Part shown: in pieces, positions 7,735 to 53,532 of the stretch | How positions within the stretch are numbered: position 1 is the stretch's first letter | How the letters are laid out: every line of letters starts with the position of its first letter | NCBI RefSeq assembly: GCF_006345805.1 | Contig: NC_042998.1 | Coordinates: 74,214,001-74,278,000, forward strand | Reading direction: 5' to 3' | DNA length: 64,000 nt | Source: Octopus sinensis | Taxonomy: Eukaryota | Translations under genes and position numbers: made by a program | Notes under the pieces: model-generated | The model's database searches: none | The model's input: the letters and a program-made list of their open reading frames with translations, nothing else | Told to the model about the DNA's origin: nothing

Positions 7735-8570
7735 TACGAGGGCGGGATGAAAATTTCATAGGCTGACTAAAAAAGGAGTGTGATGCTAGAGCTGTGAAAT
7801 CTTGCAAGCATTAATTTCAACCTTTCTTATTAATAATCTGTTTTGGTTTCTGTCCAAGTAAACTAACATCTCACTCTTCAAAGACTTCAGAAGTAACTAA
7901 TTGCGACTTCTCTTGAAAATGGCCAAAATTTGGCATCGTGGTGTTATCAAGTACCTATGGAAAAAGGGTTTATCCCCCAAGGACATTGATACTGACATGG
8001 TTGTTACATTAGCGCATGACGCGCCAGCTTTATCAACTGTGCAAAAGTGAGTAACTGAATGTTGGTAGAGAACGGAGAGTACTGAAGATGATCCAAGGTT
8101 TGGACATCCTGCAACTGCCACCACCAAGGGAAATATTGATCGTGTTCACCACATGCTGATGGATGGCAGGGGATTGACCATAAATCAAATAACCATTACT
8201 ATTAGCATATTGCGTAAGAGAGTTGTCTTCAGGCACCTGATAAAAAGCGCATTATTTGAGGCAGATTCAGCTGGTTTCCTTCGACGTTTTCTACGCCAGG
8301 ATGAATTTTGGGCTCATCACTTTCAGTCTGGGACCCACGCCTCCTCAACTCTTCCAGAGAAGGCCAGCGTCGTTTCATCTGCAGGAAAGGTGATGGCCTC
8401 AGGTTTGGGGATGCAAAAGGCATTAGGCATTGTGTTTATTGACTATCTTCAAAAATATTACACAATCAACGGAGAGTACTATGCCAACTTGCTGAGGTAG
8501 ATACGGAAGGCTATTAAGACCAAAATCCCATGGAAACTGACGAAAGAATTGTCTTCAGGCACCTGGTCAA
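7735..8570 (+). mobile_element. Mariner element, internally deleted
   Basis: Begins TACGAGGG. HTH region HRGVIKYLWKKGLSPKDI..TEDDPRFGHPAT, catalytic-region QDEFWAHH, AGKVMAS and IDYLQK..TINGEYYANLL. Confidence 0.8.
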
Positions 8571-13375: not shown

Positions 13376-13696
13376 TTAATACATTTTTTATCGTTCCAAT
13401 TAGCTTACTGAACTTATATCATCTTCACCGAAACCAGTAGCATACAACCTTTACTTAAAAATAAACAGAAATTCTGTCTTCTAAATATTTATAATGCCTT
13501 ATCAGTTGCTGAAATTTTGTTGAAGACTATTAATATTCATAGGTCGTTAATAATGAACAATGACTAAATTAAAGTTGCAGGTGGACAATACTTACGAATT
13601 GAAATGGAACTGGTTAAGATAATTTTCTCACATCGAAAGAAAGAAAAAAATTTGTCGCAGAAATTAGTGTAAAGGATTTTTTTTTTTGTCTAGCAT

Positions 13697-13704
13697 TGAC
13701 GTCA
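13697..13704. promoter_or_regulatory. Palindromic CRE (TGACGTCA) about 175 bp upstream of the tubulin ATG
   Basis: Exact match to the CREB/CREM/ATF consensus in a repeat-free upstream region. Function not demonstrated. Confidence 0.35.
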
Positions 13705-13838
13705 TAATGATAACGTAAAACGTAAGAATTTTATAGGAAAATATTCTAACCATAATTTCCATCACTTCTCTCTAATTTTGTTGTCCCTTCCTTTACGGAA
13801 GAGTTTCGATAAAAATCCAGTCTAAAATAAGATACGGA

Positions 13839-13870
13839 TTTTTTCCCCTTTTTTTCCGAACCTTATACAG
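13839..13870 (+). promoter_or_regulatory. Candidate 3' splice acceptor of a 5'-UTR intron, 7 nt before the tubulin ATG
   Basis: Pyrimidine tract ttttttcccctttttttcc (13839-13857), then ttatacAG (AG at 13869-13870), then ggacaacATG. Confidence 0.45.
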
Positions 13871-13877
13871 GGACAAC

Positions 13878-15167
13878 ATGAGAGAAATTGTTCATATACA
13901 GATCGGACAATGTGGAAACCGCATTGGAGAGAGGTTCTGGGAATATATTTCGGACGAGCATGGAATTGATCCTCTAGGAAGGTTTAACGGAGATTCAGAT
14001 CTTCAGATAGAAAGAATCAACGTTTATTTCAATGAGGCACGAATGGGAAAATACGTACCAAGGGCTATTTTAGTGGATTTAGAGCCCGCAGTATTAGATT
14101 CAATAAGAGGCTCTCCTTTTGGACAATTATTTCGACCAGATAATTTTGTTTTTGGTCAAGGTAGCGCATCAAATAATTGGGCCAAAGGATATTTTACTGA
14201 AGGCGCTGAGCTATGTGATACTGTGTATGATATTGTACGAAAAGAAGCTGAAAGTTGTGATTGTATTCAAGGATTTCAACTGACTCATTCCATTGGTGGT
14301 GGCTCAGGCGGTGGTCTCGGAGCCTTGTTAATGAGTAAAATAAAAGAAGAATTTTCAGATCGTATCAATCTCAACTTCACTGTTATACCGTCACCGAAGG
14401 TCTCCGAAACTGTTGTAGAACCTTACAATGCTGTACTATCGATAAACACGCTGGTGGATAATTCTAATGAAACAATGTGCTTTGACAACGAGGCACTTTT
14501 TAATATCTGCAATCGCACATTAAAACTGTCGCACCCTAGTTTAGAAGATCTAAATCACTTAATATCTACGACAATGTCTGGGATGACGACATGTTTTCGA
14601 TTCCCAGGTCAGTTAAATGCTGACCTGCGAAAGCTAGGAGTTAACATGATCCCATTTCCTCGTCTCCATTTCTTTATTCCGGGGTTCGCTCCTTTAACCG
14701 CTCGCAGTGTACAACCATATCGTGCAATGACAGTCCCAGAACTGTCGCAACAAATATTTGACGCCAAAAATATGATGGTTGCAGCTAACCCGCTAGACGG
14801 TCGATATCTATGCGCAGCTTGTGTCTTCCGTGGAAGATTATCGATGAAGGAAGTAGATGAGCAGATGTTCAATATTCAAAATAAGAACAGTTCATATTTT
14901 GTTGAGTGGATTCCGGATAACGTGAAAACTGCTGTGTGTGACATACCACCACGAGGACTTAAGATGTCAGCAACCTTTATTGGTAACTCTACAAGTATTC
15001 AAGCCCTTTTTAGGAGAATCATGGAGCAATATGATACAATGTTACGACGACGCGCATTCTTGCATTGGTATACTGGAGAAGGAATGGAAGAAATGGAATT
15101 CACTGAAGCTGGATCCAATTTGGCTGATCTGATTTCAGAATACCAACATTATGAGACAGTTCATTAA
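13878..15167 (+). CDS. TUBB-like: Divergent beta-tubulin, 429 aa, intron-free CDS, lacking the acidic C-terminal tail
   Basis: Uninterrupted ORF starting MREIVHIQ, with GGGSGGG (canonical GGGTGSG), [20 protein letters not shown] and [10 protein letters not shown]. It is colinear without indels with canonical beta-tubulin as recalled from memory, at roughly three-quarters identity by manual count. It ends EYQHYETVH*. Confidence 0.96.
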
Positions 15168-16857
15168 ACTGTACATCCATTGAGAGATTTATCAGACAGA
15201 ATTTGGTAAATATTGTTGAAAAGAGGGATCTGATGTTAAATGGAACAGGCCAGAAAACATGGAGGTTTCTTTGTGTCAGATATTTATTGTGATAAAACCT
15301 AATTAATCATGTTAGCTTTCTTCGATATTTATTCCATTTATCGCAAATACAGAGTACCTATCAACAGGAGTTAGTAAGTACTTATTAACATGAGTTTATA
15401 TTATAATCGCTTTCTCTTTTTTCTTCTCTCCTTCTTTCTCTCCTTCACTCTTTCTCTCTGCTAGATAAGTTATTCATATATTCATGTTAAACCACCCAAC
15501 AATTTCTCCTCTCTGTGCTGACTTCTAAGAGTTTTATGTAGAATGAAATGCTCTTGTTAATTCGTACTCCAAAACTCAGTTTCCATTCCTTCTTAAATTA
15601 CTTCAAAGAAATACTAATCAATCTTCCTAACTTATTTTCTTCATTCTCTGTTATTCCTGATATTAAATCCAACGTGGACTGGTGAGAGGAAAATATTCTG
15701 GTGTATTCTCAAAGAGAAGCAGTGACAGTATAAGAATGAGCTGTAGCTAGTAGAGATTACGTATTTTTAGATGAATAGTATGAGTCTAGGAAGGTCAATA
15801 AGATCAAGGAAAGATAGAAAGATACGATGGACCAGTGTCTTGTCCATAAGGGGAATATATGAGCCATGGAAACCGGGAAACCGGACCTTTGAGTCGATGA
15901 CTCGAGAAGGAACATTACTACTTTACTAAAAACACACGCTGTTAAGTTTACCTTATATCTTTATTTAGTCTAAAGGTGTGAACATATTTTATATACATGG
16001 TATAATACGCACAAACATGTACAAAGCCACCAGACAACCGGAAACAAAAGACAATGAGAAAGACAGATACCGTCCTAAATCCCATTTCAGCCACGGAAGC
16101 AAATGCAAACCCGGATCAGGTAACCTCCACACCCAAACATTGAATCCAACAAGTCCTTGGTACTGTGGAGTCACTGGAAGTTCCTCTCTCCGATGATACC
16201 CCAGAGATAACAGTCAAGTATGATTGCGTCAGGACCGCTAGGACCAACATGATGCTGCGGCCACATGATCACAAGACATTTCTGGATCTTGTAGGCCAGG
16301 AACTATCCGCTCCTCACCAAGGAGAACTTGTACCTGATGTGTTTGTGTAGCAGTCTTCACCCCCTTGAGCTGTTCTGTGATGACCCCCGTCGATACGTTG
16401 CAGTTGTCATTGATGTTCTGGACCTGCTAGGCGGTCCAGAGCATCAACGTCTGACTTTTGAAAATGTTCCATACTCTTGGCCACGGATAACACATCTTTT
16501 ACAGAAGATTCCAGCTCTTTCCCAATCTGGAACACAAAGGGCCGGGCCCCTTTCGAGAAGCTGACAAAATTTAAGTCACTTAGGTGAGCAGCTAGAGAGG
16601 CACAAAAAATGGCGTGCGACTTCATTTCCGGTAGAAAATTGGAATTTTTTATGTTGATGTCTGTCGGTAAGCTTAAAAGACTAATGACAAAGTTAAAATT
16701 TGGTGGATGATGCGTAAGTTAGGCACTTTTCCATTTATGACCTGCTGAATCTTGCTCATAAATACTTAGCGCATTCTTTCTAGCCCCATCTCTCTTCTCT
16801 TTCTATTTCTCTCTCTCTCTCTCTCTGTTTCTCTCTGTCTGTCTGTCTGTCTCTCTC

Positions 16858-16905
<48 letters not shown>

Positions 16906-17158
16906 GTATATACATACCTAATACATACTACATACATACGTACATACATACATATAAAATGAGAACGAGAGACGCTCACACACATACATATATACTATAT
17001 CCAAAGAGAGGGCGAGGAAGAGAGGGAGGGAGAGAAAATGGGAAAGAGAGACAAATAGACATAGAGAAGAAACTTTATCAATTGATAGTGAATTCATTTG
17101 AAAACAACGTATTTTCTTTTGCTTCTGGTATATTTATATTAACATTATTTAGAAAACA

Positions 17159-27183: not shown

Positions 27184-28299
27184 TTGGGTCATCCCATTAA
27201 TAATGTGTTGTTTTCAATTGCATGAACTAAAAGTCGGAGGGAGACGGGATAAACTACCTGCATTAACTTGCTATAAAAGCAGGTAGTAATTTAACCTTGT
27301 ACTTATTCTTAGTGCAAGTTTTGAAGAATGCAATTCGATTTTAACAGTTATTTTCTCAAAGCTATAATAGCGTTGACAAAGGAGCGTCATCGGCATATTT
27401 TGCTTTATGAGTTCAATAAAGATAAAGCGCGAGGAATGTTAATGCAGTATATGGGGATCGGGCAAATAAGCGTCAGCCAGTGTCAACGCTGCTTCCAGAA
27501 TTTCCGACCCGTAAACTACAGCCTAGAAGATGAGCCTCGTCCTGGAAGATCTGTAGAGCTCGACGAGGATGTCCTGCAAACTCTGGTAGAACAAAATCCC
27601 ATCGTAGCTGTTGAGGAACTAGTAGAGAAGCTTAGATTTGGTCATTCAACCATTCATCGACACCTGTGTGTTATCGAAAAAGTTAGCAAATTGGGTTAAT
27701 AGCTTCCTCACAAACTTTCCGAGTCTAATCGCGCGCAGAGTGAATGTGTGCTCTTTGCTGTCATGTCACGCTGTCAAGCGCTGAAGATAGTGGGTAGGGA
27801 AAGGAGAAACACCGGCACCCCAGGCTAAAGGTCTTCACCCACCAAGATGCTGTTATCTGTTTGGTGGGATATGAATGGTTTAGTCCACTTTGAACTTTTA
27901 AACTCAAACCAAACGATAACAAAGGAGATCAACTGCGAGCAGCTTGTACTGCTCATACAGCGAGGATGACATTCCAAAGGCTGGAGCAGTTTGAATGGGA
28001 AACGATACCCCACCCACCATATTCGCCGGACATTGCCCCATCTGGTTATCATTTATTCCCCAGTCTTCAAATTCATTTGAACTGAAAAAATATGAATTCT
28101 GTAGACAAGGTCAGAACAGTACCGGAGGAGTATTTTTCGTCACGGACAAGAGAATTTTGAAAGAGGGGCCTTGCAAGTCTACAGATAGGATGGAAGCACA
28201 TTGTAGAAAATGGAGAGTATACTTTAGATTAAAAAAGTGTTTATCTTAATTTTGAAAAATAAAAGTACCAAAAAACGCCTTATTTATAGGATGGCCCAA
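27184..28299 (+). mobile_element. Near full-length mariner transposon with both TIRs and TA target duplication; transposase inactivated
   Basis: Left TA-TTGGGTCATCCCATTAATAATGTG and right CGCCTTATTTATAGGATGGCCCAA-TA. Motifs RHILLYEF, SLEDEPRPGR, KLG**LPHKL (WVPHEL) and HPPYSPDIAPSGYHLF (YSPDLAP). Confidence 0.92.
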
Positions 28300-28821: not shown

Positions 28822-28940
28822 TGCTTACTGCACCTAGGTTTCCCAAGCGGTCACCCATCTAAGTACTGACTAGGCTCGACGTTACTTAACTTCGGTGATC
28901 AGACGAGAACCGGTGCTTTCAACGTGATATGGCCGTAAGA
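28822..28940 (-). rRNA. 5S rRNA: 5S rRNA copy (119 nt), probably an orphon/pseudogene or the head of a SINE3-like element
   Basis: Reverse complement TCTTACGGCCATATCACGTTGAAAGCACCGGTTCTCGTCTGATCACCGAAGTTAAGTAACGTCGAGCCTAGTCAGTACTTAGATGGGTGACCGCTTGGGAAACCTAGGTGCAGTAAGCA is typical metazoan 5S. Helix I CTTAC/GTAAG pairs. G1 is changed to T and there is no oligo-T terminator. Confidence 0.92.
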
Positions 28941-51019: not shown

Positions 51020-51083
<64 letters not shown>

Positions 51084-52064
51084 GCAAGAAATGGAAAGCA
51101 AAAAAGATCTTTGAAATACTACATAATGTGCTCAAGTTTTTCACTTGCCCCCTACTTCTTAGCCTATTCAGCCGAGTAAACACACAGTGAAATCACTAAA
51201 AGCTCTCTCTAACCGACACCATGTACTATTACTAAAACATTATCTCTGTCTCCCCTCTCTCTTTCTATCTCTTCCTTTTTTCTCCTTCTCTCTCTCTCAC
51301 ACACACACATTGTCTCTGTCTCTCTTTATCTCCCAGCCACTACGCACCATCAGAAAATCCAGCCTGTTTCTATAGCATCAAACAACCAGGTATGTCCTCC
51401 ACCACTTCCACCACTTCCAACACAACCACCACCACAACCACCACCACAACCACCGCATCAATCCTCTCTGCCTACACGAAACGATGCAAATCACACACCT
51501 GCTAACGACATTTACATTAGGACCACAACTCCACCGATCACACATTAGCTTTCATCAGTACAGTTGGGCATTATCTGCACATTAACTCAACATTAGTTGC
51601 ATATTAAGTGCACATTAGCTGCACACTGCAACAATATGTTTCATACATGTATCACAGACACATTAATCGATCTGTGAACCATCCATGTCTCAGGAGCGAT
51701 TGATTTATCGTTTTCACTACTTTCTTCCAATTCTACAGTTTAACTTTTCTTTAACTACATACTTTGCTGTTCTCCTCCAACACTGTCTCTGTCTCTCTCT
51801 CTTTCTCTCTCCCTCTCTTTCTATCTCTCTATCTATCTACCTGTCTCATTTAACATTCTACCTATCCAACAACCTATCTATTTACCTACTTACCTACCTG
51901 TCATCTAACTGTCTATTTATCTATTTTCTCATACATTTATTACATATCTGCCTGTGTCAAACCCTGTATCTACTTAACCACCTACCTACATGCTTACCTA
52001 TTTACACACACATACATATATACATACATAAATATATACATATATATATATGCATATATATATG

Positions 52065-52108
<44 letters not shown>

Positions 52109-52115
52109 ATAATAT

Positions 52116-52174
<59 letters not shown>

Positions 52175-52216
52175 CACACGCAAGAAATGGAAGCAATGTG
52201 TGTGTGTGTGTGTGTG

Positions 52217-52261
<45 letters not shown>

Positions 52262-53243
52262 GCAAGAAATGGAAAGCAAAAAAGATCTTTGAAATACTAC
52301 ATAATGTGCTCAAGTTTTTCACTTGCCCCCTACTTCTTAGCCTATTCAGCCGAGTAAACACACAGTGAAATCACTAAAAGCTCTCTCTAACCGACACCAT
52401 GTACTATTACTAAAACATTATCTCTGTCTCCCCTCTCTCTTTCTATCTCTTCCTTTTTTCTCCTTCTCTCTCTCTCACACACACACACACATTGTCTCTG
52501 TCTCTCTTTATCTCCCAGCCACTACGCACCATCAGAAAATCCAGCCTGTTTCTATAGCATCAAACAACCAGGTATGTCCTCCACCACTTCCACCACTTCC
52601 ACCACTTCCAACACAACCACCACCACAACCACCGCATCAATCCTCTCTGCCTACACGAAACGATGCAAATCACACACCTGCTAACGACATTTACATTAGG
52701 ACCACAACTCCACCGATCACACATTAGCTTTCATCAGTACAGTTGGGCATTATCTGCACATTAACTCAACATTAGTTGCATATTAAGTGCACATTAGCTG
52801 CACACTGCAACAATATGTTTCATACATGTATCACAGACACATTAATCGATCTGTGAACCATCCATGTCTCAGGAGCGATTGATTTATCGTTTTCACTACT
52901 TTCTTCCAATTCTACAGTTTAACTTTTCTTTAACTACATACTTTGCTGTTCTCCTCCAACACTGTCTCTGTCTCTCTCTCTTTCTCTCTCCCTCTCTTTC
53001 TATCTCTCTATCTATCTACCTGTCTCATTTAACATTCTACCTATCCAACAACCTATCTATTTACCTACTTACCTACCTGTCATCTAACTGTCTATTTATC
53101 TATTTTCTCATACATTTATTACATATCTGCCTGTGTCAAACCCTGTATCTACTTAACCACCTACCTACATGCTTACCTATTTACACACACATACATATAT
53201 ACATACATAAATATATACATATATATATATGCATATATATATG

Positions 53244-53290
<47 letters not shown>
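50996..53290. repeat. Near-identical tandem duplication with a period of about 1179 bp
   Basis: Copy 1 starts at 50996 and copy 2 at 52175 (CACACGCAAGAAATGGAAAGCAATG). The identical ORFs at 51685 and 52864 confirm the period. The junction lies in a (TA)n tract. Confidence 0.95.
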
Positions 53291-53298
<8 letters not shown>

Positions 53299-53532
53299 CA
53301 CGATTGTTTGATGATCGGCATTGGGAAACTCTGAGTAACAGGGGGGGGGGGTTGCTTTTTCTTTTGGTTTGTTTTGTTTTTTCAGCTTCAATAAATTGCG
53401 ATTTTACTTTCTGTTCGGTATTCGAGTGTTATTTTGTACATCTTGTTTTGTACCAATGCGGTCGCACGTGTACATGTGTGTGCCTAAATATATACATATA
53501 CATATATATACACCTATATACATACATTTATA

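What the first reader, a model, noticed from the sequence alone, without database searches (positions are those of the whole stretch)
13878..15167. Intact, intron-free beta-tubulin that completely lacks the acidic C-terminal tail (E-hook)
Seen: a stop-free 429-codon ORF colinear with canonical beta-tubulin ends EYQHYETVH*, exactly where the acidic tail normally begins. No frame after the stop encodes an acidic relic (in-frame TVHPLRDLSDRIW*), so this is not a single recent nonsense mutation. The MREI autoregulation motif and H12 residues E410 and D417 are kept. Known: the beta tail carries polyglutamylation/glycylation sites, modulates kinesin, dynein and severing enzymes, and holds the EGEF-type axoneme motif. 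Inferred: a specialised isotype that builds tail-less, modification-blind microtubule surfaces, possibly germline or another cephalopod-specific structure.
Basis: partly seen in the sequence, partly recalled or inferred. Interest (0 to 1): 0.85.

Follow-up and report, generated by a model that had tools for sequence, protein, structure and literature searches.

The report
Conserved tail-less cephalopod beta-tubulin gene
This octopus gene encodes an intact, strongly conserved beta-tubulin that ends exactly where the acidic tail normally begins; cuttlefish carry a stub-tailed version, and it probably builds unusually stable microtubules that tail-dependent enzymes cannot modify.

Summary
Window 13878-15167 (+) is a single 429-codon ORF in Octopus sinensis. 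It aligns without gaps to solved beta-tubulins over residues 1-426 and ends ...EYQHYETVH*.

It is neither a pseudogene nor a recent truncation:
- O. bimaculoides, a third octopod and Argonauta hians carry the same intron-free 429-codon gene with the stop at the same codon.
- dN/dS is 0.06-0.08, at dS about 1.1-1.3 between Octopus and Argonauta.
- A sister form of 432 aa (...QYQDATVDD*) occurs in cuttlefish and other probable decapodiforms (dN/dS 0.014-0.04).
- The seven proteins form one clade (NJ bootstrap 100/100), so the gene most likely predates the octopus/cuttlefish split.

No acidic exon lies within 48.8 kb downstream, and the sequence just after the stop is conserved like a 3' UTR.

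The whole clade also has Y222L, which removes the D177-Y222 nucleotide latch, and G96S/G98S in the T3 loop. Laboratory Y222F tubulin and TUBB(1-429) are both hyper-assembling.

Best reading: a specialised isotype for stable microtubules with no beta tail and no beta-tail modification. Expression, tissue and polymerisation remain untested. I found no paper describing it, so I rate it a new variant of a known kind.

The parts
13878..15167 (+). Single-exon coding sequence of a 429-aa beta-tubulin with no acidic C-terminal tail (stop TAA at 15165-15167)
   Evidence: ORF; Pfam Tubulin plus Tubulin_C; gap-free alignment 1-426 to solved beta-tubulins; orthologues of identical length in O. bimaculoides, a third octopod and Argonauta hians; dN/dS 0.06-0.08
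13695..13708 (+). Conserved upstream block ATTGACGTCATAAT holding a full palindromic CRE (TGACGTCA), 174 nt before the ATG; candidate promoter element
   Evidence: Invariant in all four octopod sequences including Argonauta, although flanking DNA is otherwise unalignable. It is the only TGACGTCA in the 64-kb window. The 14-mer is expected 0.12 times by chance. The decapodiform loci carry (T)GACGTCAC...GA(C/T)GTCATAAA about 85 nt before their ATG. Function is inferred, not tested.
13810..13837 (+). Conserved proximal block TAAAAATCCAGTCTAAAATAAGATACGG, 41-68 nt before the ATG (5' UTR or core promoter)
   Evidence: Nearly invariant between Octopus spp. and Argonauta; lies inside the only stretch outside the CDS that blastn aligns between the two genera
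15168..15330 (+). Conserved sequence directly after the stop codon, most likely the 3' UTR; strongest block at 15242-15298 (GGAACAGGCCAGAAAACATGGAGGTTTCTTTGTGTCAGATATTTATTGTGATAAAAC)
   Evidence: The Octopus-Argonauta nucleotide alignment runs from 13803 to 15330 and stops there; block alignment. Conservation that starts at the stop codon argues for a UTR rather than an intron.
15662..15667 (+). ATTAAA, the only canonical-type polyadenylation hexamer within 1.2 kb after the stop (candidate only)
   Evidence: Pattern scan. Its conservation in Argonauta was not examined, and no transcript data are available.

Best explanation
Window 13878-15167 is a functional, single-exon gene for a specialised beta-tubulin isotype found in coleoid cephalopods. 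It was found in Octopus, Argonauta, cuttlefish and probable further decapodiforms. The octopod protein ends at residue 429, the last residue of the folded body. A microtubule lattice containing it would therefore expose no beta tail. That means no beta-tail polyglutamylation or polyglycylation, no axoneme motif, about 12 fewer negative charges per dimer, and no handle for factors that grip the beta tail, such as katanin. All clade members have also lost Tyr222, the partner of Asp177 in the hydrogen-bond latch that couples the T5 loop to GDP/GTP, and have Ser in place of two invariant T3-loop glycines. Loss of the tail and loss of the latch each make laboratory tubulins assemble more readily into more stable or non-canonical polymers. 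I therefore propose that this isotype pairs with alpha-tubulin and makes, or seeds, long-lived microtubule arrays that resist severing and beta-tail modification in some specialised cell type. Shown: gene integrity, absence of a tail, conservation, purifying selection, the residue changes, and the absence of a downstream acidic exon. Inferred: heterodimer formation, polymer properties, and the promoter role of the CRE. Unknown: tissue and expression level.
For: 1. Intact, gap-free beta-tubulin with all beta hallmarks kept: MREI, K252, N204, N226, S172, Y281, E410, D417, E421.
2. Same 429-codon intron-free gene, stop at the same codon, in O. bimaculoides (98% aa), a third octopod (96%) and Argonauta hians (84%).
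3. NG86 dN/dS is 0.06-0.08 at dS 0.10, 0.21 and 1.1-1.3; Fisher p is 7e-12 to 1e-78.
4. The sister form is 432 aa, ends QYQDAT(V/I)DD*, and is also one uninterrupted ORF. One source run, ERR12945500, is named in bioRxiv 10.1101/2025.04.22.649952 as short reads of the cuttlefish Acanthosepion esculentum. dN/dS is 0.014-0.04 across dS about 1.08.
5. The seven proteins form a clade with 100/100 NJ bootstrap. They score about 100 bits above every single-domain, full-length canonical beta-tubulin in a profile search.
6. No open acidic stretch (at least 8 D/E in 14) lies on the + strand in 48.8 kb downstream, nor in 10 kb downstream in O. bimaculoides or Argonauta.
7. The 3' flank is conserved from the stop codon onward.
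8. Clade-wide changes at sites 100% conserved in canonical sequences: G96S, G98S, Y222L, K392R. D177E occurs in all members except Argonauta. Octopods also have T143S/S145G (GGGSGGG) and Q15R/K.
9. Literature. Drosophila beta1 Y222F breaks the D177-Y222 bond, lowers the critical concentration from 4.7 to 0.19 uM, raises nucleation about 1000-fold, suppresses catastrophe and lets GDP-tubulin assemble (PMC7871348). Human TUBB(1-429) and TUBB4B(1-429), the same length as this protein, are sufficient to form highly stable incomplete-microtubule superstructures (PMC10960023). betaIII cut back to ...YQDAT (429 residues) still assembles, but one or two fewer residues lose assembly (Joe et al. 2009, as summarised in PMC9048481). 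Katanin function depends on the beta tail (10.1101/2023.02.14.528553).
Against: No transcript, protein or tissue evidence could be obtained. The only non-genome records for octopods are short Logan contigs of unknown library type. Leu is not Phe at 222: losing the aromatic ring, which from my own knowledge packs against the guanine base, and putting Ser in the T3 loop could weaken GTP binding rather than promote assembly. The octopod T4 loop (GGGSGGG) departs from the tubulin signature. The octopod branch evolves about five times faster at the protein level than the cuttlefish branch, which could reflect partial relaxation. The AlphaFold model was too poor to add anything (mean pLDDT 55.8).
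Confidence: 0.7

Rival explanations
1. The protein folds and binds alpha-tubulin but does not act as an ordinary lattice subunit. It could be a microtubule-end cap or poison, an alpha-tubulin buffer, or a dedicated template or nucleator, because its exchangeable nucleotide site is altered.
For: Three positions invariant in 30-36 canonical sequences are changed in the nucleotide pocket and its latch (G96S, G98S, Y222L). Octopods add T143S/S145G in the T4 signature loop and Q15R/K in T1. The gene is a lone, isolated single-exon copy in repeat-rich DNA, which fits a minor, specialised product.
Against: Lateral and longitudinal contact residues and the motor-binding H12 face are kept: Y281, K252, E410, D417, E421. 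Very strong purifying selection acts over the whole length. Y222F, the nearest tested change, gives tubulin that assembles faster and still forms microtubules.
Confidence: 0.17
2. The tail is encoded elsewhere. The mRNA splices from the ACA|GTTCAT site near the end of the ORF to a downstream exon that supplies an acidic tail, so 'tail-less' is an artefact of reading genomic DNA.
For: A GT lies at codons 427-428 and ACAGTT is shared by octopods and cuttlefish. No transcript data were available to exclude splicing directly.
Against: The site matches the donor consensus only at GT and +6. No open stretch with at least 8 D/E in 14 residues lies on the + strand in 48.8 kb downstream, or in 10 kb in two other species. 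With a relaxed cut-off only 4 hits appear in that 48.8 kb, against 10 on the minus strand of the whole 64-kb window. The nearest, at 17005, falls in a stretch that blastn did not align with O. bimaculoides. The stop codon keeps its exact position across dS above 1, and conservation continues straight past it. The cuttlefish form also ends in a stop after six residues.
Confidence: 0.04
3. It is a decaying processed pseudogene or a recently truncated copy with no function.
For: It is intron-free, isolated and surrounded by transposon fragments and microsatellites. It is only 72-75% identical to canonical beta-tubulins, which are on average 84% identical to one another.
Against: dN/dS is 0.06-0.08 in octopods and 0.014-0.04 in decapodiforms, with no frameshift or internal stop in nine independent sequences. 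Length and stop position are identical across families. Promoter-proximal and 3' blocks are conserved.
Confidence: 0.02
4. The stop codon is recoded (A-to-I editing of UAA to UGG, or read-through), which extends the protein.
For: From my own knowledge, coleoids edit mRNA extensively. The octopus in-frame extension is open for 13 codons.
Against: The extension is not acidic (net charge 0) in Octopus. In Argonauta it differs in sequence and length (FKHLGVHFSS*), and it is again different in the decapodiform contig L003, so it is not under protein-level constraint.
Confidence: 0.02

Closest known systems
Canonical metazoan beta-tubulin (e.g. human TUBB4B, Drosophila betaTub56D; PDB 9fvj, 7rro, 1jff)
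   Same: Same two Pfam domains. 72-75% identity, gap-free over residues 1-426. MREI start, K252, the N204/N226 guanine contacts, S172, Y281 and the H12 residues E410/D417/E421 are all kept.
   Different: No acidic tail (net charge -13 against a mean of -25). Y222L, G96S and G98S are clade-wide, D177E is in all but Argonauta, and K392R and E412G are clade-wide. Octopods also have GGGSGGG in place of GGGTGSG, and Q15R/K. Single exon.
Engineered tail-deleted beta-tubulins: human TUBB(1-429) and TUBB4B(1-429) (PMC10960023); betaIII truncated to ...YQDAT (Joe et al. 2009, cited in PMC9048481); Chlamydomonas beta-CTT deletion (bioRxiv 10.1101/2023.02.14.528553)
   Same: Ends at the same residue number, 429, which is the shortest length reported still to assemble. 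It lacks every glutamate of the tail.
   Different: It is natural, maintained by selection across octopod families (Octopus-Argonauta dS 1.1-1.3), and accompanied by changes in the body of the protein. The last three residues are TV(H/R/Q), not DAT.
Drosophila beta1 Y222F mutant tubulin (PMC7871348)
   Same: The hydroxyl that bonds D177 of the T5 loop is lost at the same, otherwise invariant, position.
   Different: The residue here is Leu, so the aromatic ring is lost too. D177 is also changed to Glu in most members. The effect on assembly is inferred, not measured.
Natural isotypes with short or unmodifiable tails: C. elegans alpha-tubulin TBA-7 and human TUBAL3 (PMC5638583); from my own memory also C. 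elegans TBB-6 and the Tetrahymena beta-like tubulins
   Same: These are isotypes that lack the usual glutamylation sites and are proposed to tune microtubule stability.
   Different: The documented cases are alpha-tubulins that keep a short tail. TBA-7 was proposed to destabilise microtubules, although a later review attributes those mutant phenotypes to linked klp-7 mutations. This one is a beta-tubulin with no tail at all, and its body changes point towards stabilisation.
Uncharacterised divergent beta-like tubulins with short non-acidic ends in other phyla (Daktulosphaira vitifoliae XP_050545309, Prorops nasuta XP_066594709, Flagelloscypha KAH8827271)
   Same: Predicted proteins of 416-437 aa that end without an acidic tail.
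   Different: Only 40-46% identical to the octopus protein, and their own conservation was not examined. The cephalopod clade is a much closer relative of canonical beta-tubulin.

Membership tests
beta-tubulin (tubulin/FtsZ superfamily) | Tubulin GTPase domain plus Tubulin C-terminal domain | tested here: met
   PF00091 204.6 bits (cut-off 33) and PF03953 128.5 bits (cut-off 26.6)
beta-tubulin (tubulin/FtsZ superfamily) | Closest to beta rather than alpha, gamma or other tubulins, and gap-free along the whole folded body | tested here: met
   All 60 best PDB sequences shown are beta chains, aligned 1-426 to 1-426 without gaps at about 775 bits. K252, where from my own knowledge alpha-tubulin has the catalytic Glu, is kept.
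beta-tubulin (tubulin/FtsZ superfamily) | N-terminal MREI tetrapeptide (autoregulation signal) | tested here: met
   MREIVH in all nine sequences
beta-tubulin (tubulin/FtsZ superfamily) | Tubulin signature G-G-G-T-G-S-G in loop T4 (PROSITE-type pattern, recalled from memory) | tested here: not met
   Octopods have GGGSGGG (T143S, S145G). The cuttlefish and other decapodiform forms keep GGGTGSG. T143 and S145 are 100% conserved in 30 canonical sequences.
beta-tubulin (tubulin/FtsZ superfamily) | Acidic, disordered C-terminal tail after helix H12 | tested here: not met
   The protein ends at residue 429 with tail charge 0. The decapodiform form has six residues (DATVDD, -3). The canonical mean is -11.7.
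beta-tubulin (tubulin/FtsZ superfamily) | Invariant nucleotide-site residues (T3 G96/G98; H7 Y222 with T5 D177) | tested here: not met
   G96S, G98S and Y222L in all seven clade members; D177E in six of seven
beta-tubulin (tubulin/FtsZ superfamily) | Forms a heterodimer with alpha-tubulin and polymerises into microtubules | not testable with these tools
   Needs expression and biochemistry
Processed retrogene | Intron-free copy of a parent gene that has introns | tested here: inconclusive
   The ORF is uninterrupted in every genomic locus. No gene structure of a canonical cephalopod beta-tubulin could be fetched for comparison.
Processed retrogene | Poly(A) remnant and target-site duplications at the insertion | not tested
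   No dedicated scan for a poly(A) remnant or target-site duplications was run. None was noticed on reading the flanks, and at this age (dS above 1 within each sub-lineage) such marks would be erased.

The most novel reading that the evidence does not exclude
Coleoid cephalopods have kept, probably since before octopuses and cuttlefish diverged, a dedicated 'hyper-assembly' beta-tubulin. It combines two lesions known so far only as laboratory constructs: deletion of the tail at exactly residue 429, and loss of the Y222-D177 nucleotide latch. Its proposed job is to nucleate or build hyperstable, severing-resistant or non-canonical (hooked, doublet-like or tightly bundled) microtubule assemblies that lie outside beta-tail tubulin-code regulation.
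Probability: 0.3. Interest if true: 0.8.

Novelty: new variant of a known kind. Interest (0 to 1): 0.6.

Why it matters
The beta-tubulin tail is treated as a near-universal regulatory handle: a site of polyglutamylation and glycylation, a grip for katanin, a tether for motors and MAPs, and an inhibitor of doublet or triplet formation. Its roles have been studied almost entirely with proteolysed or engineered tubulins. A tail-less beta-tubulin under strong selection, conserved between octopod families and, as a stub-tailed form, in cuttlefish, is a natural experiment. It marks a place where evolution preferred a microtubule surface without that handle. It also pairs that loss with a change at Y222, a residue that controls nucleation in vitro. 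Finding the cells that express it would point to a microtubule array with unusual requirements. The protein itself could serve as a reagent, a recombinant tubulin predicted to have a low critical concentration and no beta-tail modification. The finding also shows that automatic names such as 'tubulin beta-1 chain' hide a distinct isotype class.

Tried and rejected
1. AlphaFold2 on a 32-sequence alignment gave a poor model (mean pLDDT 55.8, pTM 0.59). I did not use it and ran no fold search. The 75%-identity alignments to solved structures are the better structural evidence.
All 120 listed hits were unnamed ENA proteins, so it was uninformative.
3. The 50%-identity representative library collapses beta-tubulins. 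It gave only context on other short-ended, very divergent tubulins.
4. Text searches for the protein accessions and for most run accessions found nothing. A second attempt identified only ERR12945500, as cuttlefish. The taxa behind L003 (ERR3431203), L014, L008 (ERZ21867824) and the third octopod (SRR11869390/91/94) remain unnamed. I infer them only from distances.
5. I could not tell whether the Logan contigs are RNA or DNA. Their 5' ends are staggered and many share the same 3' end, but they also include the presumed promoter. I therefore claim no expression evidence from them.
6. Apparent nucleotide matches between L008 and the window outside the gene are (CA)n(TA)n microsatellites.
7. Retrogene origin could not be tested, because no canonical cephalopod beta-tubulin locus was available.
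8. The Argonauta genome paper gave no divergence date. Ages are therefore expressed as dS, and absolute dates are from memory only.
9. Bacterial-type promoter and terminator scans were judged irrelevant to an animal gene and not run.
Full report
**What is in the sequence.** Window 13878-15167 (+) is one open reading frame of 429 codons ending in TAA. An in-frame stop lies upstream of the ATG. It carries the Pfam Tubulin and Tubulin_C domains far above threshold. Its best matches among solved structures are all beta-tubulin chains, aligned residue 1-426 to 1-426 without a gap at about 775 bits.

The protein ends ...[10 protein letters not shown]. Thirty-six full-length canonical beta-tubulins recovered in the same searches continue for 11-34 more residues, with a mean tail charge of -11.7. 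Here the tail charge is zero, and the whole protein has net charge -13 against a canonical mean of -25. The charge of the folded body is normal. After the stop, none of the three frames is acidic. MREI, E410, D417 and E421 are present.

**Where it comes from and who else has it.** The exact protein is encoded on Octopus sinensis chromosome record CM016860.1 of GCA_006345805.1. The gene has the same length, one uninterrupted ORF and a stop at the same codon in three other octopods:
- O. bimaculoides: XP_014786384, annotated only as 'tubulin beta-1 chain', 98% identical.
- A third, unnamed octopod known from short public contigs: 96% identical, ending ETVR.
- Argonauta hians: GAB1598959, 84% identical, ending ETVQ.

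O. bimaculoides is syntenic with the window over the whole 21-kb locus fetched. With Argonauta, only 13803-15330 aligns outside of repeats. tblastn finds one copy per locus and no fragments. The rest of the window is microsatellites and transposon debris, with no other long genuine ORF.

**It is under strong purifying selection.** Nei-Gojobori estimates over the 426 shared codons:

| Comparison | dS | dN/dS |
|---|---|---|
| O. sinensis vs O. bimaculoides | 0.10 | 0.081 |
| O. sinensis or O. bimaculoides vs the third octopod | 0.21 | 0.08 |
| Octopus-like species vs Argonauta | 1.14-1.33 | 0.06-0.08 |

The deficit of non-synonymous changes is overwhelming, with Fisher p from 7e-12 to 1e-78. 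A pseudogene or a recent nonsense mutation is excluded.

**A stub-tailed sister form in decapodiform cephalopods.** One further 90%-identity cluster scored with the octopod proteins. It holds 432-aa proteins ending ...EYQQYQDAT(V/I)DD*, found on short public contigs and on a 53-kb contig of an ENA assembly. One source run, ERR12945500, is named in the Sepia officinalis genome preprint as short reads of the cuttlefish Acanthosepion (Sepia) esculentum (bioRxiv 10.1101/2025.04.22.649952).

The other contigs lie at dS 0.003-0.11 from it. Those at dS 0.05-0.11 (L003, L014) are presumably other sepiids; L012, at dS 0.003, is probably the same or a very close species. The ENA contig lies at dS about 1.08, presumably a more distant decapodiform. 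These assignments are inferences from distance only. All are single uninterrupted ORFs, with dN/dS 0.014-0.04.

The seven proteins form a clade with 100/100 bootstrap support in a neighbour-joining tree against 36 canonical sequences. In a profile search of the 5.8-billion-protein collection, only these three clusters score about 100 bits above the single-domain, full-length canonical beta-tubulins. No named protein from any other mollusc joins them, with the caveat that only the 8000 best word-sharing candidates were scored.

The gene therefore most likely predates the octopodiform-decapodiform split, which from memory is of the order of 250-300 Myr. The tail was already vestigial then (six residues, charge -3). 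Octopods trimmed it by three more codons. Octopod proteins also evolve about five times faster than the cuttlefish ones.

**No hidden tail exon.**
- The only GT near the end of the ORF, ACA|GTTCAT, matches the donor consensus only at GT and +6.
- On the + strand, the 48.8 kb downstream contains no open stretch with at least 8 D/E in 14 residues. The same holds for 10 kb downstream in O. bimaculoides and Argonauta.
- A relaxed cut-off (6 D/E in 10) gives four hits in that 48.8 kb. The minus strand of the whole 64-kb window gives 10.
- The nearest hit, at 17005, lies in a stretch that blastn did not align with O. bimaculoides.
- Nucleotide conservation between Octopus and Argonauta continues straight through the stop codon for about 160 nt, with a strong block at 15242-15298. 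That pattern is expected for a 3' UTR, not an intron.
- Read-through or editing of the stop would add peptides that are not acidic and not conserved between genera.

**Conserved non-coding elements.** The block ATTGACGTCATAAT at 13695-13708 is invariant in all four octopods. It holds the only TGACGTCA in the 64-kb window, and the 14-mer is expected 0.12 times by chance. The decapodiform loci carry (T)GACGTCAC...GA(C/T)GTCATAAA about 85 nt before their ATG. A second block, 13810-13837, is nearly invariant among octopods. I read these as a CRE-containing proximal promoter and 5' UTR. That reading is an inference, and linking the CRE to any tissue would be speculation.

**What is different in the protein body.** Against 30-36 canonical sequences, the whole clade differs at positions that are 90-100% conserved: Y36F, G71A, T72V, G96S, G98S, R156K/Q, P160S/A, H190N, I202F, Y222L, G223E/D, A254G, V258I/T, R306L/T, A373S/C, E376A/V/S, K392R and E412G. 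Octopods add Q15R/K, T143S and S145G (GGGSGGG in place of the GGGTGSG signature), D197N, Y208F, D209N and D304N, among others. D177 is Glu in all members except Argonauta.

Kept are Q11, N99/N100, S172, D203/N204, N226, C239, K252, Y281 and the H12 face. The lattice contacts and the motor-binding surface therefore look ordinary. The exchangeable nucleotide site and its T5 latch do not.

**How it most likely works.** Two independent bodies of experiment bear on exactly these features.
- Length. As summarised by Luduena (PMC9048481, citing Joe et al. 2009), betaIII cut back to ...YQDAT, that is 429 residues, still assembles. One residue fewer loses about 75% of assembly, and two fewer abolish it. 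The octopod protein has exactly 429 residues.
- Tail deletion. In human cells TUBB(1-429) or TUBB4B(1-429), but not full-length TUBB and not tail-less alpha-tubulin, is sufficient to generate highly stable superstructures of incomplete microtubules. The beta tail normally inhibits this kind of assembly (PMC10960023).
- Tail loss in cilia. In Chlamydomonas, removing the glutamate-rich beta tail gives short cilia without a central apparatus. This resembles katanin mutants, and katanin depends on the beta tail (10.1101/2023.02.14.528553).
- The latch. Y222 hydrogen-bonds D177 of the T5 loop in the GDP 'in' state. Drosophila beta1 Y222F biases the loop 'out'. It lowers the critical concentration from 4.7 to 0.19 uM, raises nucleation about a thousand-fold, suppresses catastrophes and lets even GDP-tubulin assemble (PMC7871348).

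The cephalopod clade has no hydroxyl at 222 at all. Both features push in the same direction. My best-supported model is a beta-tubulin that pairs with alpha-tubulin and seeds or builds long-lived microtubule arrays, free of beta-tail modification and poorly severable, and possibly tightly packed or hooked. The integrity, conservation and residue changes are shown. The polymer behaviour is inferred. The cell type is unknown. The main rival, at about 0.17, is that the altered nucleotide site makes it a cap, buffer or template rather than a bulk lattice subunit.

**Comparison with what is known, and novelty.** By domains, best matches, gap-free alignment and the MREI start it is a beta-tubulin. 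It fails three features usually taken as universal for the family: the acidic tail, the T4 signature (in octopods), and invariant nucleotide-site residues.
- Natural isotypes lacking glutamylation sites are documented for alpha-tubulins (C. elegans TBA-7, human TUBAL3; PMC5638583).
- From memory, C. elegans TBB-6 and the Tetrahymena beta-like tubulins are partial beta precedents.
- The representative search turned up uncharacterised, very divergent (40-46% identity) short-ended beta-like predictions in an aphid relative, a wasp and a fungus.
- The one paper in the library on cephalopod beta-tubulin isotypes tabulates their C-termini but does not include this protein.
- Searches for its accessions, for tail-less isotypes, and for cephalopod tubulin tails found no description.

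I therefore rate it a new variant of a known kind. It is already present in databases under a generic name, but it is unrecognised as a distinct, ancient isotype without an acidic tail.

**Limits.** No expression or protein evidence could be reached. The library type of the short public contigs is unknown. The taxa of several contigs are inferred from distances. Retrogene origin is untested. dS between the octopod and decapodiform forms is saturated. The structure prediction failed to reach useful confidence.

Noticed in passing
window 28822-28940 (-): Full-length match to 5S ribosomal RNA (RF00001, 103 bits against a gathering score of 38, model 1-120). It stands alone in repeat-rich DNA and could be a dispersed 5S gene, a pseudogene or a 5S-derived element.
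   Followed up: no
window 51021-53380: Tandem duplication of a unit of about 1.18 kb. Segments at 51021-51309, 51255-51451 and 51398-51697 recur 1178-1182 nt downstream at 88-99% identity. Each copy holds a microsatellite-rich stretch.
   Followed up: partly
window 8153-8500 (+) and 27328-27699 (+): ORF fragments with sub-threshold matches to mariner/Mos1-type transposase parts (Transposase_1, 23 bits; HTH_48, 22 bits), i.e. decayed DNA-transposon copies.
   Followed up: partly
window 15156-15176: The three codons before the stop (ACA GTT CAT, TVH) are nearly repeated straight after it (ACT GTA CAT, TVH), so the reading is ETVH*TVH. This is shared by the three Octopus-like species but not by Argonauta. 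It may be a small duplication or chance.
   Followed up: partly
L003 196-214, and the same place in L009, L012, L014: In the cuttlefish-type contigs an out-of-frame upstream ATG lies 16 nt before the start and also begins ATG AGA GAA (M-R-E), mimicking the tubulin MREI start. It is absent from the more distant decapodiform locus L008 (CAC GAG AGA).
   Followed up: no
octopod versus decapodiform branches of the clade (window CDS, L001, L003, L008, L009): At similar synonymous depth (dS about 1.1), octopod proteins differ by dN about 0.088 and the decapodiform ones by only about 0.016. Protein evolution is thus about five times faster on the octopod side, coinciding with final loss of the tail and the T4-loop changes.
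   Followed up: partly
L008 11853-12419 (-): The neighbour of the decapodiform gene is the tail end of a LINE-type element (weak zf-RVT match). It has thousands of 75-85% identical copies in the same ENA 'metagenome' assembly, which shows that the assembly contains a large amount of host animal genome.
   Followed up: partly
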